The translations under genes and the position numbers were made by a program. DNA of 64,000 nucleotides from Vitrella brassicaformis CCMP3155 (taxonomy: Eukaryota > Protista > Chromerida), in contig CDMY01000859.1 in assembly GCA_001179505.1 (NCBI GenBank), positions 62,001 through 126,000 of the forward strand, read 5' to 3'. This document shows, in pieces, positions 14,017 to 44,775 of the stretch; position 1 is the stretch's first letter, and each line of letters starts with the position of its first letter. Below the pieces are notes generated by a model, which was not told the origin of the DNA, did not search any database, and saw nothing but the letters and a program-made list of their open reading frames with translations.

Positions 14017-16480
14017 TCACTGCCCTCCTCCGAAGACGCCCGCGATGGCCTTGCCGATGGTCTCGACGCCCTCCTTGATGCAGCTGAGTGCCGCCCAGCT
14101 CCTCATGGAGAGATCCTGGCGGGCCGATCGCACCTCCCAGAGACCTGGGTAGGCGGCGCTGGGTTGCCACCATTCCCGCTCCTCCGTGAACGGGTTCCAC
14201 ACCCATCCCGTCTGCACGTGGTGCCCCCCCACGCTGACCAGCTTGGGTGCCCCCGCCGTGAAGGGGATGTGGTGCGCCGGGATCGGGACGCCGTGCGGCC
14301 CGAAGATGACCGGCAGGGAAGGCACTGGCCGAGCAGCTGCAGCAGGTGGTGGTGGTGGTGGTGTGGACGGATGTGCTGGCGGTGGTGACGGTGTGGTCGT
14401 GTCTGGCGGTGCGTCTGGGGCGGGGGGTGGCAGGTCGTCCTCATCGTCTTCCTCACCGACGTCTACGCAATCGCCAGCTGAGCGAGGGAGGGGCGGTGCG
14501 ATGCAAGGGAAATGGGGCTGTGGGGCCGTGCAGTGGGGCTGACTGGTGGGGGCGGGCTCCTCACTCTCGTCCTCGTCGTTGCCCACATCTACACAGTCCC
14601 CGTCTGGCGTGGGAGGCGGGAGGGATGCCGGGATGGCCAGGCGGTGGGGCGCCTTGGCGGGGTGGTGGGGCGGGATGGTGCTGCGGCTCAGGGATGGCTG
14701 CTGCGGCGTGGCCGCGACCCTCTGCACCTCCTGCTTCCTCGGGGCGACGAAGGCGGTGCCGTTCTTGACGGCGTCGAGCACCTCTGGAGACTGCAGGAAT
14801 GCCAGTACGGCCTCCAGCGAGTCCCGGATCTCCTTGAGAGTGCTCCTCCTCGACTGGTCGGCCACCAGGCCGCCCCGCTCCTCTCTTGTCTGGCCGGGCT
14901 GGTCCTCCAAAGTCGTGTATGCGATCGCGGTGAGCCTCCTCCTCCACTCGGTCAGCCACTCCACGCCCTGCTCGTTGCCCAGGTACCACAGCCCCTGGTC
15001 GATGTGGTGGCCGCAGCCCTCTGGCGGGAATGAGGGGAGGCCGACCATGGGGTGGTTGGGGTCGGTGATGACCAGGGCGCCCTCGCGCGTGAAGTCCTCC
15101 CAGTTGCTCAGCAGAGTCGCCTCCGCCTCTTCCTGGGCTTGTCTGGGACGCAGCTTCTCGCCCGTCCTCAACTCCCTCTCGCCCATGATAAACCTTTTGA
15201 GATTGTCCAGCCTGTCGAGCAGTGACCGCCCGCGCGCCGCGGCGTAGATGAGCATGCAGAAAGACCACGCGAGGGTCGGCTCGCCCAGCCACACGTCTCC
15301 CTCCCCCGACGACGGCCCTGAGAGGACGGCCTGCACCTCCGGCGGCGTGAAAGTGGCGGTGCCGGTGGGCAGCTGCTTCTGCTTCCTCCGCTCCTCGAAG
15401 TCGGTGGACACGAGGACGGCGAACGGGCCGAGATGGTCTGGGGGTGGGATGGAGTGCTCGGCCCTGGCCTTGGCGACTATGACATTGACCAAGTCGATGG
15501 CCTTGGCGCGCTGCTCGTCGCCGCCATCTGCTGCCACCGCTGCCGATGCTGCTGATGCTGAGGGTGTTGGGGATTCTAGGGCGGCTCGGGGGAGCATGAT
15601 GTTGTTGCAGAACCCGTCAAGGTGGAGCATGCCCAGGGAGTATGCCGCCTCGTGGGCCTCCAGGACGAGGAGAAGGGCGCGTGTGATGATGATGGTCTCA
15701 CGCCAGAGTTCCGCCCTCGCCTCTGGGGTGTTGCCCTCCTTGGCAAATGCAAATGCCTCGCAGGCGTCGACCACGTTGTGCTTGGTCTCGCCCTTGCTGC
15801 CAGGCCTCGCCGGGCGCCAGCCAAAAAACACACTCAACTCTACCCACTTGTCCTCTGCACACCCAACACCAACACACACCCGAGCACGAGAGCAGAGGTA
15901 TGGTCGTTGTCTTCTAGAAGGACCGACACTCTCTGTGTGCCGTGCAGTGCAGCCCACCCACCCACTCACCGCTAAGCAGTGGACTCGCTATGCACAGGGC
16001 TTCCCTCCTACTGCCGTCGGCGCCGGTGACGATGGCGGGGTTCTGTGGGTCGGTGTCGGAGGCCAGCAGGTGGAGGAAGGGATAGCGGCCGGCCGCTTGC
16101 CGCATTCGCTCCTCCTCGACCTCGAATTCCCTCTCCTTCTTGGCCCACGCTGGGTCCGCCGGGTCGCCGACGAACGCCATCTTGACGGCCGCCTCGTGCT
16201 CACGCCCTCCCTGCTGCAGCCGGGCTGCCCTGACGACGCCCGTCACCCCCTCGCCAACGATGGCGGCTTCCCCTCCCTCAAACACCGCCCTACTGCTGCT
16301 GCTGCTGAACCGGATGCTGCTACTACTGCTACTGCTGCTGCTGCTGGTCGCCATGTTGTTGCTGTGGTGCTGCTGGCGACGGTATTGCGATGGGCACGGC
16401 TGGCCAGGGGACGGCTGCGCCTGATCCGCGCCGACGGGTCGTAGACTTTGGTCGTGGGTGCTGGTGCTGCTGCTGGGCAT
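14017..16480 (-). CDS. Divergent non-RD protein kinase, paralog 1 (exons ~16480-15970 and 15854-14017)
   Basis: VGEGVTG (G-loop), AAVKM (beta3 Lys), EEERM (alphaC), LHLDGFCNN (catalytic loop), AIDLVN (DFG-equivalent), GTATFTPPE (APE). Followed by a Pro/acidic linker and a W-rich tail. Start codon uncertain. Confidence 0.85.
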
Positions 16481-16892
16481 GTGTGCTCTCTTCTGCGCGA
16501 GGACCTTTTCTCGTCGACGCCTTTTCTCGCCATGAATATCTCGCCGCGCTTATCCATGGGTTCCTTGCTGTCTGCATGAAATCCATCCATCCATTCATCC
16601 GGTGTGACGGACACGGCTGGGTGGAGGCGCCGCAGACAGCGGAGATGCTGGCGGCACAATTCATTCAAGACCCTTCCATTGGCAAAAGAATGTCAAACAA
16701 CCCATAGTGCCGTCACACTCAGCCGTGGTAACACAACACACACCACGAGGCACATAGCAGGTCCGCACCCGAGGCCATCCCGTCCTCCTATCTCTCCATG
16801 TGCCTTATTCGGGTCAGGTTTCCTCCTCTACATGCCCGTGGTCTCTCGCCACCTTGCATCTTCCCTCGACAACGACAGATCAAGCTCAGGAC

Positions 16893-16952
16893 GGAGAGAC
16901 AGAGAGAGAGAGAGGGAGAGAGAGGGAGAGAGAAAGAGAGAAAGGGAGAGAC

Positions 16953-16985
<33 letters not shown>

Positions 16986-17075
16986 GAGAAAGAGAGGGAG
17001 GGAGGGAGAGACAGAGGGAGGGAGAGAGGGAGGGAGAGACAGAGGCAGGAAGAGACAAAGGAGGGAGGGAAAGAG
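16893..17075. repeat. Long (GA)/(GGGA) microsatellite
   Basis: About 180 bp of almost pure purine repeat. Confidence 0.95.
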
Positions 17076-20123: not shown

Positions 20124-20252
20124 CACGACAACGCAGTCCGCAGACCTGATGGCAGATCTTCGGACTTGAGCTAAGCTCGCAAATTGAGCTCGCAGGGTCG
20201 ACAGGAAGGGATCGCATTCATCAGACGGGCTTTGTGATGATGCGAGCCAGGA

Positions 20253-23200
20253 GCTGAGCCAATGAAAGCAAAGAATGCAGCAAAGCATCGCAACTTTGTA
20301 CCCCCACCCATCATTTTTCCACGGTCTGTGAGTGAGTGTACTGTGTGCAGCGACAAGGCAGCCACGTTCCCTCCGCCCCTCAGCCATGCAACGACCTCTT
20401 GCAGAAATGTCATGCAAGAGCTACAGACGCGATCCACGGAATGTCATGCAGACCCTCATTCGTATGTATAGGTACACAGCTTACACAAACGCGTAAGCAA
20501 CAGAGTGAGCTGTGTACGCTTCTACACATGTGGTCAATGCACAATCTGCCGGCCCGCCGGCAGTTTCACCCACTGAAAGATGCAGGAGGAAGCAGGCAGA
20601 CAGGGAGGTCACATCGAACATCACGTACGTGTTAGACCCAAACACGTATATCATATATACGTGTTCGGGTTTAACACCTACGTGATGTTGACATGATCTT
20701 TCCCTCACCCCTCACCCCTTCCTCCCCCTCCCTGTCTGTCTGCCTGCCTGCCCCAACCACACAGCACAGCTCACCCGTAAAGACACAGACAGACAGACAG
20801 ACAGACGGACAGACAGACAGACAGGAGGGCAGACAGGCGGGCAGCTTCCCGCGCCACACAGCACCCGTCGTAAATCAATACAACCAGACAGGAGTGTGGG
20901 TGTGTCGGTTGTATTGATCTACGACGGGTGTTGTGTGGCGAGGTGAAGCGCTATGAGTGAAGGTGCACGCCCTCGGTGTTCACGGCAATGTCAAGCAGAC
21001 ACGCACAGCAAGCCATAGAAGTGTCCATACCTATGCACAGTGTGCCGGGCCGTCGGCGGTTTCACCCACTGAGCACTGGACTGCTGCGCGTGGGTGAACG
21101 TGTGACGGCCAGCAGGCACGCAAGATGGGAGCAAAACCTGCTCCCTCGTTCTCTCCGCTGGCCATCATCTGTACACCATAGTCAGTCCATCAGAGAGAGA
21201 GAGAGAGAGTAAGCGAAGAGGGAAGAACCCACCCATCAGCTTGCAGCAGTCTCGTGTGCGGCGGTGCAATATCCATGGTGGTGCAAGCACACGTCTGGCC
21301 TGCCAGCCGCCGACGCATAAGTAGCAGGCGCACCCCTCGCTGGCTATGCCATCCGCCGCCGACAAGAGCGGTCTCCCCAGGCACCGCCCACCATTCATCA
21401 CACACATACACACACTACACACTCAAATACACACACAGCCACGTATGTGTATGTGTGTGTATGTAGGCATGGAAGTCAGTCAGTCAGTCGGCCTTGCTGT
21501 TTCTCTCCATTTCTACCAGCCATGCAGGCTTGTTCATGTGCCTCCCCCGCCCAGCGTTGGCGTCGGGCGGCTCCTCGCTCTCTGTCGTCTGGTGGTAGGC
21601 CGCCCTCCCTCTCCCCTTCCCTCGCCCTTGGCCCCTGCCTCGTGGCCTGCCTCCATCTGTGCGGTCATCGCCGCTCGAGCTAGCACCTCCCCAACCTCTA
21701 CCGCCGTCAGACCCCAAGCCTTCTCCGCTGCCCCACCCCTCTCCACGACGACCCCCACCCACGCCGCTCGTCTTGCCCTCCTCCTCGGCCATGAGGTACC
21801 GCGCCAGTGCCGTCACGTCCTCACCACTGCCCTGATGCTGCTGGGGGTCTTCTCCCGGCCAGATGCCGTTCTGGGGGACTCGGACCATCGGGCCGTCCAC
21901 GGTGCTTGGCCACTCCTCCAACTCCTCCACGCTGACCGGCTCTGCGTCGAGGCTGGTTGGCCAAGCCGGTAGGCCGGGTGAGAGGGGCTGCTGGTCATTG
22001 TGTGCGTGTGGGCGTCGGTATGCCGATGGGCCCATGGGTGAGGACGTGCGGGCTGTCTCGACGGCGAGACGCGGAGGCCGACACGCCGAGACGCCTGGGA
22101 TCTCGGTCCTCTGGCACACCTGTAGCATACACATGAAGACATGGATAGTTGCGGGTCTCTGCCACGGTCCGTGCGTGTGCGCCTCACCTCGGTCCCGAAG
22201 AGCTGTCGACTTGTCGTGGCGGTGCGCATCCAAGCCGCCGCCCCGCTCCCTCTCCTTGCCGTCATCCAGGTGCCCACGGGACGATGCCTCCGATGGATCA
22301 CGTGAGGGGCGAGACAGGCCAATGCCGTATCGGTCGCGCCGACACAATCCGTCGTCATCGCGAGGCCAACCACGCCCTGCCCCCAACACCTCACGCACAC
22401 TCGCGGATGTCGGGTGGATTCTCCGCACGCAGGGGATGTCATGGTGAGGGTGGTGAGGGTTTGTATTGATCGTTTGTATTGATCGTTTGTATTGTGGTGG
22501 GCTGGGAGGCCGGGAGCCCTCTGACGAGATGGATCGCGAGCGGTGGGGAGAGCGGCGACGGACGGAGCGGCGAGGAGAGAGGTGGAATCTGGGCAGGGGG
22601 GGAGGATCTGATAGAGACATCCATCCATTCATCCATCCATCGGCGTGTGTTGGATGGTGTATGGGTCGCTCTCTCAACACCCACCACGCTGGTTTGGGCT
22701 CTGTGCGAAGGCCACCAGCCGGCACGCCATAGCGAACTCCTCCCAGCCGAGCCCATTCTTGTTACGGGTGACCAATCTAAGAATCTGGACGACCATAACC
22801 GCCACCACACACACACACGCACACACACGGGCAGACAAACACGTCTCGACGACTCTATGTATGCGTGTGCGCATTGTGCATTGTCCATGCCTGGTCAGCC
22901 ACTGCCACATTTATGCCCAATGTGAGTAGGATCTGTCTCGCCCTGCCGTGCCGGACGAACCCCAGGCAATCACCGCCTGCCGCTCTGACACAGGGAGACA
23001 CACACATAAAATGGTGTGGATCGAACACCTGACCCACACGCGCACCCGAATAGGCTTCTGTAGAGGGGGATCTCGTGTTGGTTGACTCGCACTGAGGGTG
23101 GTGGGGGTGGTGGGGCGTTGGTCGCAGGATGTCGACGCACGCCAGGGACACTGTTGAGGACCGCCCCGCCCCGCGCCGACCCCCCGCTCGACATGTTGCT

Positions 23201-26200
23201 ACGGCCTGCCGTTGCTGCTGATTGCGCGTTGGGTGACGATGGATCCGGAGCTGGTGCTTGGGCGAGTGCAGGAGCCGGGGATGGCTCACTGGGTGCTGCT
23301 GTGGGCTCACTGACCGCAACCCCCTCGCCCTCAACCTTCTCCGGGGTAACTGAAGGAGCCCAGCTTCTGGCAAAGACCTCGATCCGCTGGACTCGGCCCC
23401 GCTGCGGCGGCGGGATGTCTGGCCCAGTCACGGCCAGTCTCGCACGTGTGTCGCTCGAGACGCCTGGCGGCTGTGTGTGGGCAGAGGTGGTGGTGGGGTC
23501 AGGGAGCTGGAGGGTGAGGGCCTCCAGCCCCTGCAACGCGTGGTGCAGCGCGTCCTCGATCTCCGCCAGCGTGCTGCGGTCGCCCTCGTGGAAGCTGGTG
23601 GCCACTTTGCTGATGTTGCACATCTTGTCCAGCCAGTTCCTCGCCCACTCGAGGCCGCTTGGTTTGTCCAACAGGCCGCCCAGAGGGCTGTCGAGGCTCT
23701 TCTCGTCACCGAGGGTAGGGCGGCCTCGGCTGTCGATGAAGTGCTTGCGACGCGGGAGGCCCGCAGTGGCGCGCAGCTCAATCTCGAAGCGAACCTCCTC
23801 CTCCTCCCCCGGCGCCAGGGAGTCATCGATGGGGCGGCCCCGAGTGGCGGCTGAGTGGATCAGCAGTCCGCAGCAGTATGCCGCGGTCGCCTCGCCCACC
23901 CAGACGCCCTCCTGCTCCCCCTTGCCCACCAGCAGCCCTCTGGCACGGAGCTGGTTGCGGGCCTTGGCCCGCGCGTCCGCCACACCGGGCATTTCGGCCT
24001 TCTGCGCCTCGTTCCATGGGCCAGCTCGTCCGAAAGAGATGATGGTCTCCGGCGCCTGAAACGAGCGGGTGCCGCAGGGAATCTGCAGCTCCTTGAGCTG
24101 CCTGGCACAGTCCAGCGGGACGAGGGCCGTGCGGTCGGCGGGGCCCAAGAAGGTGGGCGGCTGTCGAGTGCTGGCCCTGCTGCCGGTGCTCGTCCCCGTT
24201 CGGCTGCTGCCGGTGCTGCTGCTGCTGTGGGCGCCGCTGAGGGTGATGATGTTGCCAAGGTCGATCATCCTGACGCCATTGTCGGCTGGGTATGGCCGCA
24301 GGGGCCTCTTGCCGTGCAGGGTCGTCTGGGGTATCATCACGTTCTTGTAGAAGCCGTCTGGGTGGAGGACGCCGCAGTCCATGGCTCCCCCGTGGGCCTG
24401 GACCACGAGGAGGAGGGCGCGGGTGATGACCAGGAGGTCCTGCCGCAGCAGCTCTACCCTCTCCTCGAGTGTGCTCGTGTCGATGCTGCGCTCGAAGCGA
24501 TCCACAGCCGCACCCACGTTGTATGGGGTGAGGTCGCTGACTTCCGCCCACCCAAACTGCTTGGCGGCCTCGACGAACTCATCACCTGCATTCAGGACAC
24601 ACACACAACACAGCACGACAAACACGGACCACAATGAGGGACCTGCCCGCCCCACATGACCCGCCGTCCCGGTGCCCTGATCTATCTGCTCTGGCCTGAT
24701 CTTGCTTCCCCCCTGGCTGCCCACAGTGCGTGGCTCGCTCGCTGCCTCACTCACCCTCAAGCACCTCCATGGCTATGCACAGCACGGCGGTCTTAGTGCC
24801 GTTGGCCTTTTCGTACATGGCCGGCTTGCCGGGGTCGGTGTCCGCCACCAAGAGGCGGATGAAGGGCGGCCACCCCCCCATCCGCCGCATGGCCTTGGCC
24901 TCGGCCTGCAGCTCCGCTATCCCCTGCTGCTGGGTTGGGGGATTGTTGGGCAGGAGGGTGAGCCGCTTCAAGGCCACCTCGACTGGCATGCCGTCCCCGC
25001 ACGGCAGAGGCCGCCAAAGCTTGGCCCGCACGACAGCCTCACCCTTGCCCTTGCCGAGAGTGGGGCCCTCTTCAAACTCGGCCCTGTGGCCGGTCTGAAA
25101 GACGATGGCCGACATGCTCATCGTCTGCTGCTGATGCTGCTGCTGGTGCTGGTGAGCGGACGCTGCTGAGGGAGGCACAGTAGCGCTGCTGGTGCTACTG
25201 GTCGACTCACACGACACCTGGCCGCCGATGTCGTGAGAGTCGTCGGGCGGTGTGGGCGTCGGGCCTGGTGCTGGTGCTACTCCTGGTGGAAATGTGCTCT
25301 CAGACCTGACACATCCATGTCACAACACCAAACACAACACCAAACACATAAGTGACACGTACATGGACGGATGGATGGATGGATGTGTCGTGTCGTGTTG
25401 CGTTGTGTTGTGTTGTCGTGTGTCGTCATCTCACTTGAGAGGTGGGTCGTGAGCGTCGTCAGCATCAGGATCGGTGTGCTGCTCCTTATGCTTGCTGCCA
25501 TCTCCCGCCGCAGATACGCTACGCTCGCCGCCAACAAGACCAACATCCACACACCCACTGCGTACACGCATCAACCATGCATGGGAGAAGGAAGATCAAT
25601 CAAGGAGGAGAGGCCACAGACACTTTGTGTGGGTGTGGTACAGTACCTGGTGTGGCGCGGGTGTGGCAGGCTCTCCCCTACCGCGCCACGGACGGAAACA
25701 GAGAAGAGGCGTCCTGATGGACAGGCCCGTTGGACAGCAGACGGATCTCCAGCAGCAGCCGTCTGCATCAATACACGCAGACACACAAGTTAGTTACACA
25801 TGTACACGAACGAACACTCACCCTCTTTGTTGAAGTAGTTTGGGCGGCACTCTCAGCACCTCCCGACGCGTCGCCGCTCATCTCTCCTCGCCGGTCCGTA
25901 TCAGCCGCAGAGGAGGAAGCCGCCATTGACACAAGACGCCTGCACGAGCGACAAACAAAGCGAGCGCAGAGGAAACTACGCATGAGCCTTCGTGGGGAAT
26001 GGATGCATCAGTGCCTCTCTCTCAATCTCTCTCACCTAGATGCAGTAGCCGAAACGCCTGAAGAAACGCCTCACCATGCGTGGCGCTCCCAAGGTCTCTC
26101 TGCTTCCTGCCGGCCCGCCTCGTTCACCTTCGCCAACGGTTTGCAGCCATCCGGACGGGAGGAATGTGGCGTGTGACGAACATCTTCCAAGCCCCACTAA

Positions 26201-26675
26201 ACCCCGAACCCTGCAAATGAAACCCTGGATGGGCCGCTTCCCTGCATGAGACGGACAGCCACGGCCATTGCAAACATACCCATGGAGTGTGACAGACTGT
26301 ACACGCAGGCACGCCAGACTGAGTCCATACCCACTCCCGTGTCCATTTAGCTGCACAACAAGCATTCCCTTCCCTGCCCCTCACCATGCACATGCCCTCC
26401 AATCCATCCAATCTGTCCACCCACCCAGGCAGGCAGGGAGGCAGCCACTCAGACGGCCACAGAGAGTAGGATCGTCACAAACCCAGCAGACAGCCAGCCA
26501 GCCAGCCAGCCAGCCAGACAGCTGAGCCAATGGAAGCAAAGAGTGCAGCAAAGCATCGCAACTTTGTACCCCCACACCCCCACCCACCCTCCACGGTCTG
26601 CGAGTGAGTGTCCTGTGTGCAGCGACAAGGCAGCCACGTTCCCTCCGCCCCTCAGCCATGCAACGACCTCTTGCA
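20253..26675. repeat. ~150-bp dispersed direct repeat (20253-20403 and 26521-26675)
   Basis: Both copies contain GCAGCAAAGCATCGCAACTTTGTACCCCCA...CTGTGTGCAGCGACAAGGCAGCCACGTTCCCTCCGCCCCTCAGCCATGCAACGACCTCTTGCA. Confidence 0.9.
21484..25290 (-). CDS. Divergent non-RD protein kinase, paralog 2, with a C-terminal EH (Eps15-homology) domain and a probable Arg/Ser/Gly-rich tail
   Basis: LGKGKGE, VALKRL, AEAKAM, LHPDGFYKN, MIDLGN, CGTRSFQAPE. Exons 22984-22891 and 22784-22685 splice in frame to YRSLFGAAGGDCLGFVRHGRARQILLTLGINVAVADQILRLVTRNKNGLGWEEFAMACRLVAFAQ. The 5' end and the tail beyond 22607 are uncertain. Confidence 0.85.
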
Positions 26676-28706
26676 TGGCTGAGAGACACTGTCTGTGGCA
26701 CACACGAGCTACAGCACACACATTCGTTTGGTGGACAAAACATAGCATGTAACATGGCATCCATCGCACGAAAAACAGCAGCATCAGCACCGTGCATCCA
26801 TCCGTCCGTCCAATCGTCTACCTCTCCTCTCTGCCCTCCTTCTAGCTGGCCCCCTTGCCCCAACCGCTCTACATGCGTGCGATGCCCCTGCCGATGGTCT
26901 CGACGCCGGCCCTGATGCCCTCTGCGAGCTGCTCCGCGCCCTCCCTGATGTCCGTGGCGAGTGCCCATGTGCCCATCATGAGGTCTTGGTCACCCGACCG
27001 GACCTCCCAGATGACGCGCCCATAATCATCTACTTCACCGGACGGCTCTCACCACTCCCACTCCCCCGTCCATGCGCTTGGCCGCCAGTGCGCCACGGGA
27101 TGCTGGTTGATGGCCCCCACTGTGGGCACCAGGCGGGCGTTGCACGCCTTGTATTGGGGTGCGAGCATCGCGAGGGCCCTGAAGAGCTCCGTCTCGATGT
27201 CGCTGAGGGTTCCGCGGTTGGCCATGTCCGCGCTCATGCCCCTCGCTGTGATGCGGCAGATGGTGTCCAACCAGCTCTCGGCGTACTGCAGCTGGGGTGA
27301 CTTGAGGGGGAGGGTGTCGAGCGGGCTGTCGACCTGGCCGTGGTAGGAGAGGGGGCGGCCGTCATGCTGCAAGAGGGGCCTGCCCAGGCCCGCGGCGGTG
27401 CGCAGCTCTGCCTTGTCAGTGCCCTTGTTGATGGCCACCCCTCTGGTAACGGCATGAAAGATGCTCGAGACGCCATACACCGCCACCGACTCGTCCACCC
27501 TGATCTCCTCTCGGCCGTCGGGGTGCAGCAGCAGCACCCTATTGGCGTGCAGGTCTTCTCGCACCTCCTTCAGGGCGTCCTTGAACTCCTCCCTCCCCTC
27601 CGGCCAGTCAGCGGGCCTGCCGGACTGCAGCACCACGGTCTCGGGCGACCGGAACCATTTCGTGCTGCCGGGCCGCTGATGCTGAGCCGCCTGGGTGTCG
27701 GGGTCCAGAGGGATGAAGGCGCTGCGGCTGCTGGGGTCCACCGTGACCATGTTGCCCAGGTCAATGGCCCGCACGCCGTTGTCCGCCGGATAGCGGTGGG
27801 GGTGCCGTTTGACGAACAGCACGCGTCGGGGCAGCATGATGTTCCTGTAGAAGCTATCCAGGAGAACCGCGCCGCGTGACAGGGCTCCCTGGTGGGCCTG
27901 CGTGACCAGGATGAGGGCCACGGTGATGGCCCTGAGGTCCTCGCGAAGCCGCTCCACCTTCTCCTCGAAGCTGCTCTTGCTGCTGCGGAATCGCTCGGCC
28001 ACATTCAGCAGGTTGAACGAGCCGGGGCGTTCCTCACCGTCCCAGCCGAACAGCTTGTTCGTCTCGACAAACCCATCAGGGCCTGCAGGCAGCCAGTGTG
28101 CAAACAGGGATACACATCTGATATGTTCTGATCTGATCTAATCTAATGTGGCTCACCAAGGTATTCCATTGCGATGCACAGCACGGCCTCCTTCGTCCCG
28201 TCGCTCTTGTGGTAGGTGGCTGGGCTGTGGGGATGGGTGGCGGCCGCGAGAACCGGCAGGAATGGCGGCCGGCCGGCCATCTGCAGCATCTTGCTCTCCT
28301 CGATTTGCAGCCCTCGCACCTCGTCGTCGTCGAAGGTGCCGTCCTCCTTCGGCGAGAGGCGCTTGACGGCGGCCGTGACGGGTGCGCCGTTGGGCTGCCG
28401 TAGGACGCCGAGGAGGACGGGCTCACCCTTGCCCTTGCCCGCTATGGCGCCTTCCCAGAGCTCCACCCACTTACGTACCCACTTCCCGTCCTGGAACTTG
28501 GGCTGGAAAACGATGCACGCCGGCATGGCTGATGCTGCTCGGCTGCTGCTGCTCTAGTGGTTCTCTCGTGTGGGCACCGTTGTGGCGCGTTCCAGACCCC
28601 ACCAAACCCCGAACCCTGCAAATGAAACCCTGGATGGGCCGCTGCCCTGCATGAGACGGAGAGCCACGGCCATTGCAAACATACCCATGGAGTGTGACAG
28701 ACTGTA
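26195..28706. repeat. ~110-bp direct repeat bracketing kinase paralog 3 (~26195-26305 and ~28600-28706)
   Basis: Both copies contain AAACCCCGAACCCTGCAAATGAAACCCTGGATGGGCCGCT...CCACGGCCATTGCAAACATACCCATGGAGTGTGACAGACTGTAC. Confidence 0.9.
26869..28526 (-). CDS. Divergent non-RD protein kinase, paralog 3 (exons 28526-28157 and 28082-26869), with an in-frame TGA at 27049-27051 in its tail
   Basis: AGKGKGE, AAVKRL, EESKM, VLLDSFYRN, AIDLGN, GSTKWFRSPE. Same phase-1 intron position as paralogs 1 and 2. The conserved tail continues 59 codons past the TGA to a TAG at 26869. Confidence 0.8.
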
Positions 28707-29052
28707 CGTGACTTCGCTCATTCATGTGCAAAAGCAGCTTCATTGATTGTCTCCCTCCTCCTTCACACCACCATGATGGGTCACAACAGCAGCTTTGCTG
28801 ATTCTCCACAGCCCTCAATGACAAACACACACACACATCCACACACACATTCCCACACACACACACATGAATTACGCTGCGCACCAAAAAGGGAGCATTC
28901 ACCGACCACCACTCACTGAGCTGAGCAGCAGCGCTGCCTCTACAGCCGCTGAATGAATGACTATCCACACACTTGACACGTGCAGCAGAAAGCCAGCCAG
29001 CTATACACAAGGAAAACAGAGACAAAAGGGTGGGTGCCGTCCGGCAATCTAG

Positions 29053-30991
29053 CTAACCGCCACAACTCTTGCCGTCTGCAGCGCTCTCTAGCCGCACGTA
29101 GACCTTCACCGGCGTCAGCGGCAGCATCAGGGAAGGCTCCGTCGACGCCTCGGGCGCACCCTCCGCCCGCACACACGTGTGGTCGGCCAGCAGCTTGGCG
29201 AGTATCAGCTTCATGAGGGGGAAGGCCACACCAGAGCCTGGGCAGCCCCTCTTGCCGATTGAGAAGGGGAAGAAGACGGGCGAGTGGCCGTGGGCGCCCT
29301 TGGTGTGGCGGGGCGGCGACACTCTGGCGGTAGACGACGGCAGGGCCTCCTGCTGGCCTTGCTGGCTCCCATCGACTGTCAGGAATCGTGACGGATCAAA
29401 ACTGTGGGGCTTCTCCCAGATGCTCTCGTCTCTGCACACAGACAGACACAGAGAAACAAACCTCGTGAGTGCAAAGCAGTGTTTAAACGGCGTGAGGGAG
29501 GACTCACCGGTGGACGAGCCATGGGTTGGTGAATACGTCGCATCCCTTCCGCATGGCGAGGGTTTCGCCGAGCGTGTGATCCTCCACCACCTTGCGGCCG
29601 ATGTGGATCGGTGGATACATCCTAACACACATACAGAAAGACGCCTTGAATACGACGCACTGGCTGGGAGATCACTGCTTGTCAGCCGGTGCTCACCTGA
29701 GTGTCTCCAACAGGACGCCATGCAAGATGGGCAGCCTGTCGACGTGCTCAAAGCCCACTGCATGACGGCTGAGGCCGCACACACGGTGAATCTCGTCACG
29801 CACCAACCCCTTAACGAACAACATAACATCGACAACAATCCCCACCCACCCCACCAAGACGCTTCTCTCCCTCCCCCTTCTGTCTATGTACCTGCCACTG
29901 GCAGTTCTCGTCTTGCGCCAGGTGCCAGAGTGTCCATACGATGGTGGTCGACACGGACGCCGCCCCGGTGAACAGCAGCTCCAGGATGACCTCTGTCCTG
30001 TCCTCCAGGCTCATCGACGGGTGCGACGCATTCAGGTGGGCGATGGCGCACCAGGGCCGGTCAGAGGGGTGGGCGGCGATGCGCTGGCGGACAGCTGTCC
30101 GGAGGGCATGGCAGAGGGAACGGAATCGGATGTTCCTCAGGAAAGGAAGTCTGTGCCAAAACCTGCGTCAACACACACCTGTCAGCGCCCTGGTGTCGAT
30201 TCTTTTGTCTGCGACGCGTACCACACTGTGTGTGTGAGCGGATCGTCGATCTGCTCGATGACAGCCTTCCACGCCCCCTCATACAGACGCCTCAGCTCCT
30301 CGTCGGTCTCCCCCAGCACCTCCACAAGCACCACATTCCAGTAGAAGGATCGAAAAGCCACTGCAAAGTCCGCCATCTCGTGTGCCTTCAGCTGGTGGAC
30401 GAAGCCGTCGATCAGCGGGTCGATTTGCGCCTGGAACAGAGCCCGATCATCGGGGCGCCTGAGGAGCTGAGAGACCAGCTGGTGGACCACAGGCCAGGCG
30501 TCGCTGCCCCCTGCTTCGCTCGCCTTGCCCTTGCCGCTGTAGGACAGGCGAGTCTTTCTGAAGGTCTCCAGCACCTGGATACAGCCACACCATAGAAACG
30601 ACGATGTCTGCTTGGCTCTTTGGCTCACCCCATAGGCGTGCATCTTGGTGTAGCAGTCGTTGTGTGACACGCACATCTGCCGCATCAGCACTGGGTCAGC
30701 GATGCAGTAGAAGGTCTTCAGGTTGAAGGGCAGCTGCAGCCTCAAAACGCCGCCCTCCTCACCAGCCCACCCACGCACGTGCTCCAGCAATGCACGTGAA
30801 TTTCGCCGGGAGGACAGAAGACCCAGATCGGCCGAGAAGAGTGATAGCGACCGAGGAGCATGGCCAGTCCGCTTCTTCCGTGCAGCACAGAGAGCAGCAA
30901 GGGCTCCAAATAACACGAAGACAAGCAGAAGCGCCGCTCCTTCGAGAATCAGCAGTTGCGAAACGCCTTGGATTTCAGATACAGCTGGCAT
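29053..30991 (-). CDS. Cytochrome P450, multi-exon
   Basis: N-terminal hydrophobic anchor (AALLLVFVLFGALAALCAA), I-helix ELLFTGAASVSTT, ExxR (ETLR), PERF-like FDPSRF, heme motif FSIGKRGCPG. Confidence 0.95.
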
Positions 30992-31177: not shown

Positions 31178-33496
31178 ATGAGGTGGTGTCTGATGCTGGC
31201 GCTTGTGTTGATCACCGTAGCTAATGGCAATGAGGCCTCTGCGTCGGCAGGGTTTGCTTTCCCAGCACTCCATCGTCGCTCTGTTAGTCGCCTTCTACCG
31301 CAGACGCCGCCCTCTGATTCATCCCTGGTCAGGCCAAGCGCAGCTGCTGTTGCACTGGTGGATGACGTCACGCAAGAGAAGCCGCAGCAGCCGCAGCAAC
31401 TGGAGGCTGCACCCCTCGTCGAGCCATTCTGGGTGAGAAACACATCCATCGATGTGAGGCGGTGTTACGCTTTTTTGGTGGCTTGGTGTGTGTGTTGTCT
31501 TTGATCAGCGTGGGATTGCACGTGACGCGAAGGCCCGCTATGCCCTCTATCGCTCTGACATAGTGGACGGCATCTCCCTCAAGGCCCTCAGCTCCATTTT
31601 CTTCCTCTTCTTCGGCTGCCTGGCGCCCGCCGTGGCCTTCGGGTCGGCCATGGCTGCTGCCACCGGTGGGCAGATCGGCAGCATCGAGATGATCGTTGCC
31701 ACGGGGATGCTCGGCCTCATCTACGCGGCCTTCTCTGCACAGCCGCTGACCATCATCGGCAGCACCGGGCCGGTGCTGGCCTTCACTTCGGCCCTGTACA
31801 AGGGGTGTCAGGCGATGCAGTTGCCCTTCCTGCCCACCTATGTGTGCATCGGCCTGTGGAACACGCTCTACCTGGGAATTGCGGCCGTCTTCTCGATGAG
31901 TAACAGCATCAAGTACCTGACGCGATGGACGGACGAGATCTTCAGCCTCTTGATATCGGTCATCTTCATGTACGAGGCCCTCGTGTACTTCTCAGGCCTC
32001 TTCACAAACACGGCTGGTAAATGTGGAAGAAACTCTATGAGCATTTGTCTGTTTCCATTTCTGTGCGCTGGGCGTATTCAGTGTCTGCGAGCACCGCTGC
32101 CCTGTCCACCGGCATCGGCGCCTTCACCTTCATCGCGGCGGTGCTGCTGTCTGGCCTGAGGAAGAGCCCCTTCTTCAACCGATTCATCCGCGACAAGACT
32201 GCAGACTTCGGGCCAACGATTGCTGTCGCTGGCGGCAGTGGTCTGGCGTACTTGGCTTACCTGAGGTACGGTATCCGTCTGCCCACCCTGAGCATGCCGT
32301 CAGCTCTCACGACGTCCACTGGGAGACCGTGGCTGATGCGTAAGTCTAAGACAACGAGCACAGACGACAGAAGCACTCGGTGTTTTTTGTTTGTGTGGAT
32401 TGTCAGTGCGCAGCCTGTCGTCGCTGCCCTTGTGGGTGCGTTGGGGGGCCGCTCTGCCCGCCCTGATGTGCACGGTGCTGCTCTTCATGGACCAGAACAT
32501 CACTGTTCGTCTGGTCAACAGCAACAAGCACAAGCTCAAGAAGCCCAACGGCTATGACCTGGACCTCGCCACACTCACCGTCACCACAGGTGCGCCGGTG
32601 CACGTGACGTTGCCGAGAGTGTCAAGCTGTTTGGCCCCTGTCGGTCATCAGGCATCTCGTCTGTGTTGGGGCTCCCTTGGCTGGTGGCCGCGACTGTGCG
32701 GTCCCTCAACCACGTCCGCTCGGTCATGAACTTCGACTACTCAAAGGTGCGACGAGAGAATACAAGCCGCGTGACACACAGTCTTTGTCTCTATGGCTGT
32801 GTCAGGGGGGCGATGACAGCAGTGCTGTCGTGGGTTGTGACGAGCAGCGTGTGACAGGGCTGGGGATCCACACTCTCATCCTGACGTCAGTGATACTGTT
32901 CAGACAGCAGCTGGCGCTCCTGCCTGAAGCTGTACTCAAGGTCAGCCAGGCAGTACACATACGATGGCCAAACGAGCACAGGTGATTGGTGTTGTGTTGT
33001 GTTGTGTGTCAGGGTCTGTTCTTGTTCCTGGGTGTGTCCACCCTTGCTGGTAATGAGATGTGGCAGCGCACCAAGCTCTTCGTGACCGAACCGAAACTCG
33101 CACCCAAAAGGCCATGGTAAAGCGGACTGACAGACGTCACACAGACATGCACATCATGGGGGAGAGATAGGCTGCCGGCCTGCCTGTCCTTGGATCTGCG
33201 ACGTGCGCAGGACCAATGTGGTGCCATTGCGGAAGGTGCATCTGTTCACGGCCGCGCAAATCGCGTGCCTGGCCGCCGTCTGGCTGCTCAAGGTGAGGAT
33301 GAGGCAACAGAGACCGACCGAACTATGGTAATGTCTCGGTGTGGTGTGTGATCTGTGACCTGTCTGTCTGCAGGAGAGTTCCATTGGTGTGATGTTTCCC
33401 GTCATCATAGCGCTGCTGCATCCCATTCGTGTGGCACTGGAGAGATACAAGGCATTCTCGGCAGAGGAGGTGGCAGTGCTTGACAGCGAGGATTGA
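31178..33496 (+). CDS. SLC4/BOR-family (HCO3- cotransporter fold) anion transporter with an N-terminal signal peptide and transit-like extension, multi-exon
   Basis: IFFLFFGCLAPAVAFG, SAQPLTIIGSTGPV, YLTRWTDEIFSLLISVIF, LLFMDQNITVRLVN, GLPWLVAATVRS are characteristic SLC4/BOR segments. N-terminus MRWCLMLALVLITVANG. Confidence 0.93.
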
Positions 33497-41070: not shown

Positions 41071-41830
41071 TCACCCGCACACAGCACCGTCCATCCGTCG
41101 CTTCCTGCACCTGCCCCACAAGGGCGGGCGTCCACAGCCCCAGCCACTCCCGAATTGGCCGCGACCGACCGGCCCACTCTCAGCTTGGCCGCCCATTGAC
41201 ATGCCATCGGCCGCTGGCGAGACACTGACACACTGGGGTGTGACGGCCGGGGATTGGAAGATGGGGTGGGAGGGGCCAGGTGCCTTGAAGACCAGGGCGT
41301 CTACCGTGAAGTGGTGGTCGGTGGCCGCGTGAGAGTGTGGAAGTAGGGGCGGCTGGATGCTGTCGTCGATGAAGCAGCCGTGCATGCCTCCATTGCTCCG
41401 GGTGAGGAACAGCAGGCAGCTCGCATCGCCCAAGCGGGTGAGCATGTCGGTGAACTCGAAGCCGTCCACCGTAGCCCTGCAGCCAGCCGCCCACACAAAG
41501 CAGCAGGTGACAGACTCCTCTCCATCCGTTGCCTCCTTACTTGTAAAGCAGCCGGGTGCCTGTGATTTGTTTGCCCGTCTGCTGCAGTATGCCCACCCAC
41601 TCAGCCAGGCAGCCGACGGGGACGTATCCAAATGTTGTGGGTGGCTTCATCAATGTGTGTACAGCCCCTGAGGACAAGACAAGTGGATCCATACCCATAC
41701 ATCCACACTCCCCCACACACATGTGTACGCATCGATCGGCCGCGAGAGCACCTTTTGCTCTCTTGTGCGCGGGGAGGGGGGGGGAGAGCTTGATAAAGTA
41801 ATATGAGTGAGGGGATCTGTATGCGTGCGT
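41071..41830 (-). pseudogene. Degenerate TLDc-like domain fragment
   Basis: LILLYQA (~41800) followed by DGFEFTDMLTRLGDASCLLFLTRSNGGMHGCFIDDSI, resembling the TLDc LLYxxxxDGF...L.LV...GCF pattern. The frames do not join cleanly. Confidence 0.5.
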
Positions 41831-43205: not shown

Positions 43206-43445
43206 CTCTCTGCTCGCTCCGCTATCTATCAGTGGCATGCGCCTGCCTGTGCCTCTCTCCCCTATCTGTCTCTCTGCTCGCTCCGCTATCTGTCTCTCTG
43301 CTCGCTCCGCTATCTGTCTCTCTGCTCGCTCCGCTATCTGTCTCTCTGCTCGCTCCGCGCTCGCTCCCCTATCTGTCTCTCTGCTCGCTCCGCTATCTAT
43401 CAGTGGCATGCGCCTGCCTGTGCCTCTCTCCCCTATCTGTCTCTC
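43206..43445. repeat. Compound 24-bp minisatellite
   Basis: The unit TCTCTGCTCGCTCCGCTATCTGTC is repeated in tandem and bracketed by two copies of a longer block containing CTATCAGTGGCATGCGCCTGCCTGTGCC. Confidence 0.95.
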
Positions 43446-43488
43446 TCCCTGTCCGCCATTCCCCCCCCTCCCTCCTCCTCCCTCCTCC

Positions 43489-44775
43489 TCATTGGCCGAA
43501 CAGCCCTGCGATGGCGTTGGCGATGCCCTTGCCGACCCTCTCGGCGCCCTCCTTGAGGTCGGTGAGTGCCGCCCAGCTCCGCATGACGAGGTCCTGGTGG
43601 GCCGAGCGCACCTCCCAGAGACCCGGGTAGGCAACGCTCGGCTGCCATCCATCCATCCATCCATTGAGCACCCAGCCCTCGCGAACGTGGTGGCCGCCCA
43701 CGCTCACGTACTTGACGCCCCCGGCTGGTAGGGCACGTTGTGCGCCGGGATGCGGGTGCCGCGCGTGTCCTTGACAAAGGGCAGCGGGGATGGCAGCGAT
43801 GGGGTGTGTGCGGGTGGGGTAGGCGTTGGGGCAGGTGGTGGTGCTGCGTCGCCGTGCTGGTCCTCGTCCTCGTCAACCACGTCGATGACATCATCGACGT
43901 CGCCAGACGGCTGTTCAGGGGCAAGGGGTGCGGATGGCTGCAGGGCCATGGCAGTGCGCGCGGGGCTGGCGTGTGGCCGTTGTGGGAAGGGGTCCTCAGG
44001 CACGTCGTCGGGCTCTGTGGTGCTGTCCTGCTCGAATGTGGCTGCGGCTGTGTCTGTATGATGGGGCTGGCTGGGGCTGCGGCTGACACAGGGCTCCTCG
44101 GGCACCGCCACGACTGCGACCGCCTCCATCTCCTTCCCCTGGTGCTGCGGCTGTGGGTGGACTGTCGTCTCGTCCTCCTCTCTCTCCCCCTCCTCTCGGT
44201 GATGGCCATGGGCGATGTGTGGTGGCTGTGGTGGCTGTGCTGCTGCGGCTGGGTGGTCCTGCTGGGTGCGGCGGGTGCTTGGCTCGAGAAGCTGGAGGGC
44301 GGGGGCCTCCAGCTTGTGCAGCTGCTCAAACAGCCTGGTCTCGACTTCCTTGAGTGTGCCGCGGTGCTCCTCGTGGAAGTTGGTCCCCTTGGCAGCTATG
44401 GCGCACATGCCGTCCCGCCACTTCTTGGCGAAGTCGAGGCCGGGGGTGTCGATGATCTCGTCGAGGGGGCTGTCGGGGGTGCCGTCAAGCTTGATGGGGT
44501 GACCATCATCTTCGATGAAGTCCTCTCTCCCCGTGCCCGACACCTTGCCCGACACCGCCCGCATCTCCTTCTCGCTCTCAACCAAGGGGTGCTGCTCTGC
44601 GCCGGCCGTGAGGGGCCTCATGATGGTGCGGCCGCGCGTCGCTACCGAGTGCACCAGCAGCAGGCCCGCGGCATGGACGGTAGCCGGCTACCCAGCCAGA
44701 TGGCCTCGTTCTGGCCCTTGCCCACCAGCACACCCCTCTGCCGCAGACCAGCACGCACCTCTGCCCTGGCTCTGT
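43489..44775 (-). pseudogene. Kinase paralog 4: C-lobe and tail only, with two frameshifts
   Basis: RARAEVRAGLRQRGVLVGKGQNEAIWLG matches paralog 2 (RAKARNQLRARGLLVGKGEQEGVWVG). A 1-nt loss at ~44690 shifts into HSVATRGR; a second at ~43712 precedes VSVGGHHV...WQPSVAYPGLWEVRSAHQDL. No N-lobe was seen upstream. Confidence 0.85.

What the first reader, a model, noticed from the sequence alone, without database searches (positions are those of the whole stretch)
14017..44775. Array of four paralogous divergent non-RD kinases with interchangeable terminal modules
Paralogs 1-3 share a phase-1 intron after (A/V)LCIA...L and the peptides FGW and (I/A)IT(R/V)AL(L/I)LV..AH. Their unusual catalytic loops (HLDGFCNN, HPDGFYKN, LLDSFYRN) and DL(G/V)N replacing DFG retain Lys, Glu, Asp and Asn, so they are probably active. 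Paralog 4 retains only the C-lobe. The ends differ: W-rich tail (1, 3, 4), EH domain (2), J-domain exons upstream (4). Non-RD kinases are enriched in plant and animal innate-immunity signalling, and expanded divergent kinases such as ROPKs typify apicomplexans. A birth-and-death kinase family with modular ends in a chromerid is the best candidate here for an undescribed signalling system (inference).
Basis: partly seen in the sequence, partly recalled or inferred. Interest (0 to 1): 0.78.

Follow-up and report, generated by a model that had tools for sequence, protein, structure and literature searches.

The report
Vitrella-only family of divergent kinases
The window holds three intact genes and one decayed fragment of a fast-evolving protein kinase family of about 50 genes, found only in the alga Vitrella brassicaformis. 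Standard domain models miss it, but it keeps every core catalytic residue, so it is a real lineage-specific kinase expansion, not a shown new signalling system.

Summary
Predicted structures of P3 and of a paralogue on another contig are complete protein kinase folds (pLDDT 83-89; Z 19-22 to FES, PknB, BRAF). The beta3 Lys, catalytic Asp and DFG Asp are invariant across 51 family representatives, and the alphaC Glu nearly so. No member has the HRD Arg (non-RD) or the catalytic-loop Lys.

Pfam detects none of P1-P3. UniProt auto-labels P1 and P3 "Protein kinase domain-containing protein".

A C-lobe profile searched against 1.84 billion proteins found 51 hits. All 47 that I traced are Vitrella brassicaformis.

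- The four copies belong to a dispersed family of about 50 genes, not a self-contained array.
- P4 is a frameshifted remnant.
- P3 is transcribed, but a TGA present in its mRNA cuts off the tail.
- The W-rich tail is ancestral to the family, not a swapped module.
- The EH-like end of P2 is a real, diverged copy of three exons of an EH-domain gene on another contig. Its splicing is unproven.
- The J-domain pieces are frameshifted pseudo-exons.

No link to immunity is shown. No other window's report in this scan describes this family.

The parts
14017..16480 (-). P1: intact gene of two coding exons (16480-15970 and 15854-14017; 115-nt phase-1 intron). It encodes the kinase domain (catalytic loop HLDGFCNN, DLVN in place of DFG), a Pro/acidic low-complexity linker, and a W-rich tail of about 95 aa. 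Public model CEM35594.1 / A0A0G4GX87, 782 aa (P0008).
   Evidence: No RNA was found.
14020..14310 (-). W-rich C-terminal module of P1 (core GW.WNP...WEWW...GLWEVRSA.QDL). It is the ancestral tail of the family.
   Evidence: It occurs at 25 places in the genome and in 12 of 52 family proteins across clades. There is no Pfam hit and no useful Atlas match.
22973..25121 (-). P2: kinase coding region. The N-lobe exon is 25121-24755, followed by a 169-nt phase-1 intron. The C-lobe exon starts at 24585. Catalytic loop HPDGFYKN, DLGN in place of DFG, and a Ser/Thr-rich insert in the activation segment. The ORF runs in frame into the first EH-like exon.
   Evidence: No public model was retrieved, and no RNA was found.
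22677..23099 (-). EH-like 3' end of P2. It has three exon-like pieces: about 23099-23048 (..YRSLF), about 22983-22891, and about 22793-22677. They are collinear with three exons of an EH-domain gene at G000:C214:64.0-64.5 kb. The conserved Trp of the EH pocket motif (IW) reads IL here.
   Evidence: The Pfam EH model hits C214 but not the window. Piece c is 56% identical over 34 aa to the C214 EH exon. Collinear tblastx/blastn matches include intron sequence.
26522..28643 (-). P3: a transcribed two-exon gene (28643-28157 and 28082-26522 or beyond; 74-nt intron). The CDS is 28526-27049. Catalytic loop LLDSFYRN, DLGN in place of DFG. Public model CEM35601.1 / A0A0G4GX25, 467 aa (P0006).
   Evidence: RNA contigs L021 (JGI 3300017148) and L022 (Logan SRR646408) give an exact protein match. 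The AF2 model has pLDDT 88.9.
26872..27051 (-). In-frame TGA (27049-27051) followed by the remnant of the W-rich tail (..VIWEVRSGDQDL..). It now lies in P3's 3' UTR.
   Evidence: The TGA is present at 100% identity in RNA contig L022.
43492..44962 (-). P4: a decayed fragment holding only the alphaEF/alphaF-to-alphaI part, a linker and half a tail. There is a stop plus a frameshift at about 44690-44741 and a frameshift at about 43700-43755. There is no N-lobe and no catalytic loop. The public model (P0032, 353 aa) starts at an internal Met and splices around the second frameshift.
   Evidence: dN/dS against P2 is 0.81. No N-lobe was found upstream as far as about window position 50,000.
44900..47428 (-). 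Three degenerate copies of J-domain exon pieces. Copy 1 is at 47153-47428 plus 46935-47100, copy 2 at 44900-45243, and copy 3 at about 46240-46330. An HPD motif is present, but copies 1 and 2 are each frameshifted inside the second piece.
   Evidence: Pfam DnaJ E 6.7e-5 and 0.0038, both below the cut-off. These pieces are not part of the public P4 model.
28590..28707 (.). A 118-bp element spanning the 5' end of the longer P3 RNA contig (L022). Its only other copy in the genome (96% identical) is at 26185-26302, upstream of P2.

Best explanation
The window carries five-member-cluster copies of a Vitrella brassicaformis-specific multigene family of highly divergent eukaryotic protein kinases. 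Four copies are in the window and one lies just outside. The family has about 50 representative clusters genome-wide.

Each full member has these parts:
- A complete bilobal kinase domain. A conserved phase-1 intron at the hinge splits it in the window copies.
- A Pro-rich or acidic disordered linker.
- Ancestrally, a W-rich C-terminal domain of about 90 residues with unknown fold.

The ATP-binding and phosphotransfer residues are kept throughout: the beta3 Lys, alphaC Glu, catalytic Asp, catalytic-loop Asn and the Mg-binding Asp. The proteins are therefore most likely active, cytosolic, Mg-ATP-dependent protein kinases (inference).

The whole family lacks the HRD Arg, so activation-loop phosphorylation is probably not their switch (inference from what is known of non-RD kinases). 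It also lacks the catalytic-loop Lys. In P2 and P3 a Lys or Arg two residues further on (..FYKN, ..FYRN) occupies the position used by tyrosine kinases (HRDLAARN). Residue specificity is therefore open.

Family-specific additions in the models are:
- an N-terminal three-strand extension;
- a long conserved Pro-rich activation segment;
- a helix plus hairpin before alphaF.

The family evolves by tandem and segmental duplication, fast divergence and decay. P1 is intact. P2 has swapped its tail for a captured, diverged EH-domain fragment. P3 is expressed but lost its tail to a nonsense codon. P4 is a pseudogene remnant next to broken J-domain pieces.
For: Fold:
- The AF2 model of P3 (pLDDT 88.9, pTM 0.87) and of the C666 paralogue (82.6, 0.83) match only protein kinases.
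- Foldseek gave at least 500 hits at E <= 0.001; every listed row was a kinase.
- VIA gave Z 19-21.6 at rmsd about 3.0-3.6 A over about 255-270 residues, spanning model residues 1-432. This included an exhaustive scan of 48,161 chains.

Sequence:
- The family profile hits TK/TKL kinases in register at the G-loop/VAIK/alphaC, the catalytic loop and alphaH-I (Mer E 4e-4).

Conservation across 51 representatives, consistent:
- beta3 Lys 34/34
- alphaC Glu 32/34
- catalytic Asp 35/35
- catalytic-loop Asn 27/36 (plus 8 Asp)
- DFG Asp 37/37
- APE 41/42
- alphaI Arg 30/30
- HRD Arg 0/35
- catalytic-loop Lys 0/35

Distribution:
- The C-lobe profile found 51 hits in 1.84 billion proteins. All 47 traced are Vitrella.
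- The genome has 37-55 exon matches on more than 20 contigs.

Expression:
- P3 is encoded exactly on two RNA contigs that confirm the intron.

Evolution:
- The tree is, dN/dS, and broken copies.

Tail:
- The tail is ancestral.

Localisation:
- No N-terminal hydrophobic signal was seen in a crude check.
Against: - No biochemical evidence of activity exists.
- The HRD His is replaced in most members (Cys, Leu). The DFG Phe/Gly are Leu/Ala. The catalytic-loop Lys is absent. Some of these changes occur in pseudokinases.
- Pfam gives no kinase hit for 50 of 51 full-length members. The C-lobe profile alone hits nothing in the PDB. Homology of the C-lobe therefore rests on predicted structure and weak in-register profile segments.
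- RNA support exists only for P3 and one other family member. None was found for P1, P2 or P4.
- 'Vitrella-only' holds only within the reach of a HMMER C-lobe profile. Four of the 51 hits were not traced.
- The no-signal-peptide check was a simple hydrophobicity count.
Confidence: 0.75

Rival explanations
1. They are pseudokinases: proteins with a kinase fold that bind nucleotide or partners but do not transfer phosphate. They would act as scaffolds or allosteric regulators, as many ROP5-like or STK40/Tribbles-like proteins do.
For: No member has the HRD Arg or the catalytic-loop Lys. The HRD His is usually Cys or Leu. DFG reads DLA, DLG or DLV. STK40, CASK and IRAK3 pseudokinases are among the top structural matches. 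dN/dS is high for kinases, at 0.3-0.65.
Against: The four residues most often lost in pseudokinases are invariant or nearly so over paralogues only about 20-35% identical: the beta3 Lys, alphaC Glu, catalytic Asp and DFG Asp. That pattern is hard to explain without selection for catalysis or at least Mg-ATP binding. The structural matches are flat across active kinases too.
Confidence: 0.17
2. One reading: a modular, immune-like signalling system. Non-RD kinases would carry interchangeable terminal recognition modules (W-rich tail, EH, J) and diversify by birth and death, like pathogen-sensing kinases.
For: The family is non-RD. It is large, clustered and fast-evolving, with pseudogenes. P2 really has a different, captured 3' end. 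Another note of this scan reports a hypervariable ankyrin-kinase family in the same genome (s1-221681, not tested here).
Against: The tail is ancestral, not shuffled. The J pieces are frameshifted and are not in the P4 gene model. The EH-like copy has lost the pocket Trp and is unproven in RNA. No receptor, TM, LRR, TIR, death or NB-ARC part occurs in 51 representatives. No signal peptide was seen. No data link the family to any biotic response.
Confidence: 0.06
3. They are small-molecule kinases of the eukaryotic-like kinase type (such as aminoglycoside or choline kinases), not protein kinases. The catalytic loop reads x-x-D-x-x-x-x-N without the protein-kinase Lys.
For: The catalytic loop pattern D....N without Lys, and DL(A/G) instead of DFG, recall APH/ChoK/RIO-type loops (from my own knowledge).
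Against: An exhaustive structural scan ranks only canonical protein kinases in the top 50, with full-length C-lobe alignment. The APE motif (41/42) and the alphaI Arg (30/30), which are hallmarks of protein kinases, are conserved. The alphaF-alphaI helices are present in the models.
Confidence: 0.02

Closest known systems
Tyrosine-kinase and tyrosine-kinase-like (TK/TKL) group ePKs, e.g. Mer/Axl/Tyro3, SYK/ZAP-70, ACK1, RAF, CTR1, ACVR1, IRAK4
   Same: - They are the best, though weak, profile matches, in register at the G-loop, VAIK Lys and alphaC Glu, the catalytic loop and alphaH-I.
- The full kinase fold matches at Z about 20.
- P2 and P3 carry a Lys/Arg at the position of the TK catalytic-loop Arg.
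   Different: - E-values are only 4e-4 to 0.1 and are driven by the N-lobe. The C-lobe profile alone finds no solved kinase.
- There is no HRD His-Arg.
- DFG is DLA/DLG.
- The activation segment is much longer, and there is an extra helix-hairpin before alphaF.
- Structural Z-scores are flat across all kinase groups, so no group assignment can be made.
Apicomplexan lineage-specific kinase expansions: ROPK (rhoptry kinases/pseudokinases of coccidia) and FIKK (Plasmodium)
   Same: They belong to the same broad lineage (the chromerid-apicomplexan clade). They show the same evolutionary behaviour: an orphan, rapidly diverging, clustered ePK family that standard models barely see (from my own knowledge of ROPK and FIKK).
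   Different: - No signal peptide or export element was seen (crude check).
- The glycine-rich loop is present and the VAIK region reads AA(I/V)K, not FIKK.
- Catalytic residues are uniformly kept, unlike in many ROPKs.
- The C-lobe profile retrieved no apicomplexan protein from 1.84 billion.
- No ROPK or FIKK structure appears in the top 50 structural matches.
- ROPK and FIKK HMMs were not available to run.
Non-RD kinases of innate immunity (IRAK1, RIPKs, plant XA21/FLS2-type receptor kinases)
   Same: The Arg before the catalytic Asp is absent (0/35). IRAK4, IRAK1, RIPK2, RIPK3 and a rice receptor-like kinase are among the structural matches.
   Different: There are no death, TIR, LRR or transmembrane parts. 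The structural matches are no better than those to unrelated kinases. The immune role of non-RD kinases is a statistical association in plants and animals, not a property of the motif.
NAK family (GAK, AAK1, BIKE, STK16)
   Same: They rank at the top of the Foldseek list for P3 (E 4e-7 to 1e-6). They also have an atypical, structured activation segment.
   Different: Their E-values and Z-scores are within noise of PknB, IRAK4, CLK and others. There is no sequence-level link and there are no shared family motifs.

Membership tests
Eukaryotic protein kinase (ePK) superfamily | Bilobal kinase fold, with a five-stranded N-lobe plus alphaC, and a helical C-lobe from alphaD to alphaI | tested here: met
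   AF2 models have pLDDT 82.6 and 88.9. VIA gave Z 19-21.6 at rmsd about 3.0-3.6 A over about 255-270 residues against FES, PknB, BRAF, CaMKII and others. All listed Foldseek hits are kinases.
Eukaryotic protein kinase (ePK) superfamily | Conserved catalytic residues: beta3 Lys, alphaC Glu, catalytic Asp and Asn, DFG Asp, APE Glu and the alphaI (subdomain XI) Arg | tested here: met
   K 34/34, E 32/34, D 35/35, N 27/36 (plus 8 D), DFG-D 37/37, PE 41/42 and R 30/30 among 51 representatives. These residues are invariant in 19 exon sets.
Eukaryotic protein kinase (ePK) superfamily | Match to the Pfam Pkinase or PK_Tyr_Ser-Thr models above the gathering score | tested here: not met
   There was no hit at E <= 1 for P1 or P3, and only E 0.16-0.23 for the C666 copy. 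Among 51 full-length members there was no hit at the gathering score. UniProt's automatic label (its basis is not shown in the tool output) does call some of them kinase-domain proteins.
Non-RD kinase class | No Arg immediately before the catalytic Asp | tested here: met
   0 of 35 aligned members have Arg there. The residue is Leu, Pro, Ile or another. P1 reads HLD, P2 HPD and P3 LLD.
FIKK kinases | Phe-Ile-Lys-Lys motif in the N-lobe and no glycine-rich loop | tested here: not met
   The G-x-G loop is present in 27 of 28 aligned members. The beta3 motif is AA(I/V)K or VA(L/I)K.
ROPK (rhoptry kinases) | Signal peptide, an N-terminal extension, and a match to the ROPK-specific HMM | tested here: inconclusive
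   The crude hydrophobicity check shows no signal peptide. The C-lobe profile finds no apicomplexan protein. No ROPK HMM was available.
EH domain (Pfam PF12763) at the end of P2 | Match to the EH model: a pair of EF-hand-like helices with the conserved pocket Trp | tested here: inconclusive
   There was no Pfam hit on the exon pieces and no window hit in the six-frame genome scan with PF12763. However, the pieces are collinear, three-exon paralogues of a Pfam-positive EH gene on C214 (56% identity over 34 aa). The pocket Trp is Leu in P2. The joined exons were not searched.
DnaJ / J domain (Pfam PF00226) upstream of P4 | Match above the gathering score, with an intact HPD-containing helix II-III | tested here: not met
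   The pieces score 23.4 and 17.7 bits against a cut-off of 27.8. HPD is present, but the reading frame breaks right after it in copy 1 and later in copy 2.

The most novel reading that the evidence does not exclude
The family is a Vitrella-specific recognition and signalling system. The fast-evolving W-rich tail (and, in P2, a captured EH-like module) would bind variable partners or ligands. The constitutively competent non-RD kinase would relay the signal. This would be an independent, cytosolic analogue of the expanded non-RD kinase repertoires used in plant and animal innate immunity.
Probability: 0.07. Interest if true: 0.7.

Novelty: new variant of a known kind. Interest (0 to 1): 0.4.

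Why it matters
Chromerids are the closest free-living, photosynthetic relatives of apicomplexan parasites. The parasites' own orphan kinase families (ROPK, FIKK) are central to virulence.

This work shows that Vitrella has independently built a family of about 50 very divergent kinases that still have a full catalytic residue set. Pfam-based kinome counts miss the family entirely. Two things follow:
- The tendency to spawn orphan kinase families is not confined to the parasites.
- Published or automated kinome sizes for this lineage are underestimates.

The family also offers a natural test set. It can show how far a kinase can drift (no HRD His-Arg, no catalytic-loop Lys, DLA for DFG, a 40-75-residue activation segment) while keeping the catalytic core.

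The family is ordinary in kind, since lineage-specific kinase expansions are common in protists. No new mechanism is shown.

Tried and rejected
- **Word-index protein search.** It was blank twice for the P2 exon, probably swamped by low-complexity words. It gave only two hits with P3, so it was no use for finding relatives or the P2 gene model.
- **PDB sequence searches.** A search with a single paralogue and one with the C-lobe profile found no kinase.
- **First alignment of whole-domain and exon fragments (A1).** It misaligned alphaD onto the N-lobe. It was rebuilt with trimmed references (A4), which left only small residual slippage.
- **The search for related loci with the alignment.** With the P2 and P1 exons it found no JGI contig, so there is no RNA evidence for these two. 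The tool may also withhold records of this genome.
- **Exact-sequence look-ups of the P1 and P4 models.** Nothing was on record.
- **ESM Atlas search for the W-rich tail.** The matches were heterogeneous and meaningless.
- **A 23-nt mini-intron to bypass the TGA in P3's tail.** I considered this and rejected it. It is too short and breaks the frame, and the RNA contig keeps the TGA.
- **The J-domain pieces as functional 5' exons of P4.** I considered this and rejected it because of the frameshifts and the public model.
- **Joined exon models.** Searches were run exon by exon by reference, on public proteins returned by the tools, and on one natural ORF (L001) that reads through its hinge intron.
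- **Literature.** Three searches and the chromerid genome paper (PMC4501334) gave no description of this family.

Full report
**What is in the window.** The window is G000:C859:62001-126000 of a 72.7-Mb, 1064-contig genome. The proteins it encodes are those of Vitrella brassicaformis CCMP3155.

- P1 (14017-16480), P2 (22973-25121 plus 3' pieces) and P3 (CDS 27049-28526) each consist of an N-lobe exon and a large C-lobe exon. These exons are mutually similar (tblastn E 1e-9 to 1e-49).
- In all three, a GTGAG donor in phase 1 follows the LCIA..L hinge peptide. A good acceptor precedes the ..FVE...FGW peptide. The introns are 115, 169 and 74 nt.
- The P1 junction equals the public gene model (P0008). 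Two RNA contigs prove the P3 junction.
- I did not build joined exon models of my own. All searches used single exons by reference, public proteins returned by the tools, or one natural ORF on contig C666 (L001:1902-3653:-) whose hinge intron happens to be open in frame.

**Is it a kinase?** Standard sequence tools say almost nothing.

- Pfam finds no kinase domain on any exon, or on the full-length public proteins of P1 and P3. At the gathering score it finds none in any of 51 family representatives.
- A single paralogue and the C-lobe profile find no solved kinase.
- The N-lobe profile and the whole-domain profile do find protein kinases, and almost only those, in register. Mer tyrosine kinase scores E 0.008 and 4e-4, followed by Axl, ZAP-70, ACK1, SYK, A-Raf, ACVR1 and CTR1.
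- The Mer alignment picks up three collinear segments: G-loop/VAIK/alphaC, the catalytic loop (..D....N.. against HRDLAARN), and alphaH-alphaI with the subdomain-XI Arg.

Structure settles the question.

- AlphaFold2 on the C666 ORF with the family alignment gave pLDDT 82.6 and pTM 0.83.
- AlphaFold2 on P3 (P0006) gave pLDDT 88.9 and pTM 0.87.
- Foldseek returned at least 500 hits at E <= 0.001 for each model. Every listed row was a protein kinase.
- VIA-align gave Z 18.6-19.8 for the C666 model and up to 21.6 for P3, at rmsd about 3.0-3.6 A over about 255-270 aligned residues spanning model residues 1-432.
- The P3 run included an exhaustive comparison with 48,161 representative chains. The top matches were FES, PknB, STK40, BRAF, ASK1 and EGFR.
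- Scores are flat across kinase groups, so no group membership can be claimed. The sequence profile leans weakly to TK/TKL.

**Catalytic residues.** In 19 exon sets that are 25-60% identical, the invariant columns are exactly the beta3 Lys, the alphaC Glu, a Pro-Phe after alphaC, the catalytic Asp, the catalytic-loop Asn, the DFG Asp and the Pro-Glu of APE. Across the 51 representatives, wherever the position aligns:

| Position | Count |
|---|---|
| beta3 Lys | 34/34 |
| alphaC Glu | 32/34 |
| catalytic Asp | 35/35 |
| catalytic-loop Asn | 27/36 (8 Asp) |
| DFG Asp | 37/37 |
| APE | 41/42 |
| alphaI Arg | 30/30 |
| Arg before the catalytic Asp | 0/35 |
| catalytic-loop Lys | 0/35 |

- The HRD His is mostly Cys, Leu or His. 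DFG is mostly DLA.
- The family is therefore uniformly non-RD and lacks the Ser/Thr-kinase Lys.
- P2 (..FYKN) and P3 (..FYRN) have a basic residue where tyrosine kinases have their Arg. P1 has Asn.
- I infer that these are active Mg-ATP phosphotransferases whose regulation does not depend on activation-loop phosphorylation. Residue specificity cannot be read from sequence.
- Family-specific elements in the models are an N-terminal three-strand extension, an extra helix between alphaD and alphaE, a long conserved Pro-rich activation segment (..PP.F(L/M)G...A.VP.D...Q.P.GT....PE), and a helix plus hairpin before alphaF.

**How big and how widespread.**

- The C-lobe exon of P2 matches 55 places, and the N-lobe exon 26 places, on more than 20 contigs of this genome. 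One copy lies about 4 kb before the window start, on the opposite strand (L014, P0013).
- A C-lobe profile scored against all 1.84 billion representative proteins found only 51 proteins at E <= 0.001, 21 of them at 1e-30.
- I traced 47 of the 51, through exact mapping to fetched loci or the window, or through source records. All are Vitrella brassicaformis.
- The library includes EukProt, MMETSP, NCBI and UniRef sources. Within HMMER's reach, the family is therefore species-specific.
- UniProt auto-names P1 (A0A0G4GX87), P3 (A0A0G4GX25) and some others "Protein kinase domain-containing protein", and the rest "Uncharacterized".
- The chromerid genome paper does not treat kinases (PMC4501334). 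Three literature searches found no description of the family.

**Evolution.**

- In a maximum-likelihood tree of the C-lobe (33 rows), P1 pairs with the neighbouring copy P0013 (support 100).
- P2, P0011 (contig C518) and the pair P3 + P0017 (contig C436) form a clade (support 99). P1 lies elsewhere in the tree.
- The window copies are thus not one local tandem burst. Each has relatives as close or closer on other contigs.
- Pairwise NG86 dN/dS is 0.33-0.64 for intact pairs and 0.81 for P4 against P2. These estimates are rough. They indicate weak purifying selection overall, with strict conservation of the catalytic core.
- Decayed copies are common: P4 here, P3-like copies on C436 with frameshifts or TAG, and a stop in the C255 copy.

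**The ends.** The W-rich tail of P1 (about 14020-14310) recurs at 25 genomic places, mostly at family loci. It is found in 12 of 52 proteins (the 51 representatives plus one cluster member), including members of the most distant clades (P0019, P0021). It is therefore the ancestral C-terminus, not a swapped-in module. It has no Pfam match and no informative Atlas neighbour.

- **P3.** The tail is cut by an in-frame TGA (27049-27051), and recognisable tail sequence continues after it (26872-27048). RNA contig L022 carries the TGA at 100% identity and runs on through the remnant, so the remnant is 3' UTR.
- **P4.** There is a stop and a frameshift in the alphaF region, no N-lobe or catalytic loop, and another frameshift before the tail. 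The public model (P0032, 353 aa) starts at an internal Met and splices around the second break.
- **P2.**
  - There is no W-rich tail. Instead the ORF runs in frame into ..NQHEIPLYRSLF, the first of three exon-like pieces (about 23099-22677).
  - These are collinear, introns included, with three exons of a gene at C214:64.0-64.5 kb.
  - The third C214 exon matches the Pfam EH model above its cut-off (26.2 bits). It is 56% identical over 34 residues to the P2 piece.
  - The P2 pieces themselves fail the EH model, and the pocket Trp is Leu.
It is unproven as a spliced, functional domain.
- **J-domain pieces.** The pieces upstream of P4 are sub-threshold DnaJ matches. They lie in three degenerate copies. 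The two better copies have the HPD motif, but each carries a frameshift.

**Expression.**

- P3's exact 467-residue product is encoded on JGI contig Ga0186167_105627 and on Logan SRR646408_5847, both spliced as predicted.
- A second family member (P0036) comes from a JGI/IMG contig of 2,130 nt, whose nature (RNA or DNA) was not checked.
- No RNA was found for P1, P2 or P4. The tools may withhold records of this genome, so these blanks are weak.
- Two small repeats bear on P2.
  - A 118-bp element spans the 5' end of the longer P3 RNA contig (28590-28707). Its only other genomic copy, 96% identical, lies upstream of P2 (26185-26302).
  - A 167-bp piece of P3's 3' UTR recurs at 20242-20403.
  - The last 87 nt or so of the JGI RNA contig match that second copy, not P3's own. 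That stretch is therefore transcribed.
  - I infer that P2 may have a P3-like promoter and a transcription unit reaching to about 20.25 kb.

**Verdict.** The finding is best described as a species-specific, fast-evolving, non-RD protein kinase family with an ancestral W-rich tail, seen here as three intact genes and one wreck. The immune analogy and 'interchangeable modules' are not supported beyond one gene-fragment capture. This fits the ordinary segmental duplication and decay that another note of this scan saw elsewhere in this genome (s1-080144, not tested here).

Noticed in passing
window 28590-28707 and 26185-26302: A 118-bp element is present exactly twice in the 72.7-Mb genome, at 96% identity. 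One copy spans the 5' end of the longer P3 RNA contig (L022). The other lies about 1 kb upstream of the P2 start codon. The two coding regions are only about 40% identical. This suggests a shared or converted promoter/5' UTR.
   Followed up: partly
window 26509-26675 and 20242-20403; L021:1835-1984: A 167-bp piece of P3's 3' UTR recurs, at 90% identity, about 2.6 kb downstream of the P2 ORF. The JGI RNA contig for P3 switches to the 20.3-kb copy for its last 87 nt or so (100% identical). The contig is therefore chimeric, and the 20.25-20.34 kb stretch is transcribed.
   Followed up: partly
G000:C214:64034-64455 (L026:6035-6455), and 65513-65587: This gene has two Pfam-positive EH-domain hits. 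Three of its exons, with their introns, are the paralogous source (or sister) of the EH-like 3' end of P2.
   Followed up: partly
window 44900-47428 (-): A J-domain exon pair has been triplicated and decayed. The HPD motif survives in two copies, and each of those has a one-base frameshift. Flanking low-complexity sequence is duplicated with them.
   Followed up: partly
L004 (G000:C436:89500-99499) and L003 (C436:40000-47000): Contig C436 carries its own cluster of P3-like copies (three, some with frameshifts or a TAG) and P2-like copies (two). This mirrors the P2/P3 pair in the window.
   Followed up: partly
P0001 (G000:C7:51000-55500, L009): The public 918-aa model contains an internal repeat of about half a kinase domain, from the hinge to the APE motif. 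This is either a partial tandem duplication or two genes merged by the annotator.
   Followed up: no
L001:1902-3653 (G000:C666): In this paralogue the hinge intron is open in frame. One ORF therefore spans both kinase lobes with a 28-residue insert. The public model (P0009, 489 aa) exists for this gene.
   Followed up: partly
window 29056-29838 (-) and 31488-32156 (+): Unrelated genes lie between P3 and P4: a cytochrome P450 C-terminal exon (Pfam E 4e-15) and an HCO3-transporter exon (E 5e-55).
   Followed up: no
window 13447-13746, 50730-51029, 52387-52686: There are three 300-N assembly gaps. The first lies 270 bp downstream of the P1 stop codon.
   Followed up: no
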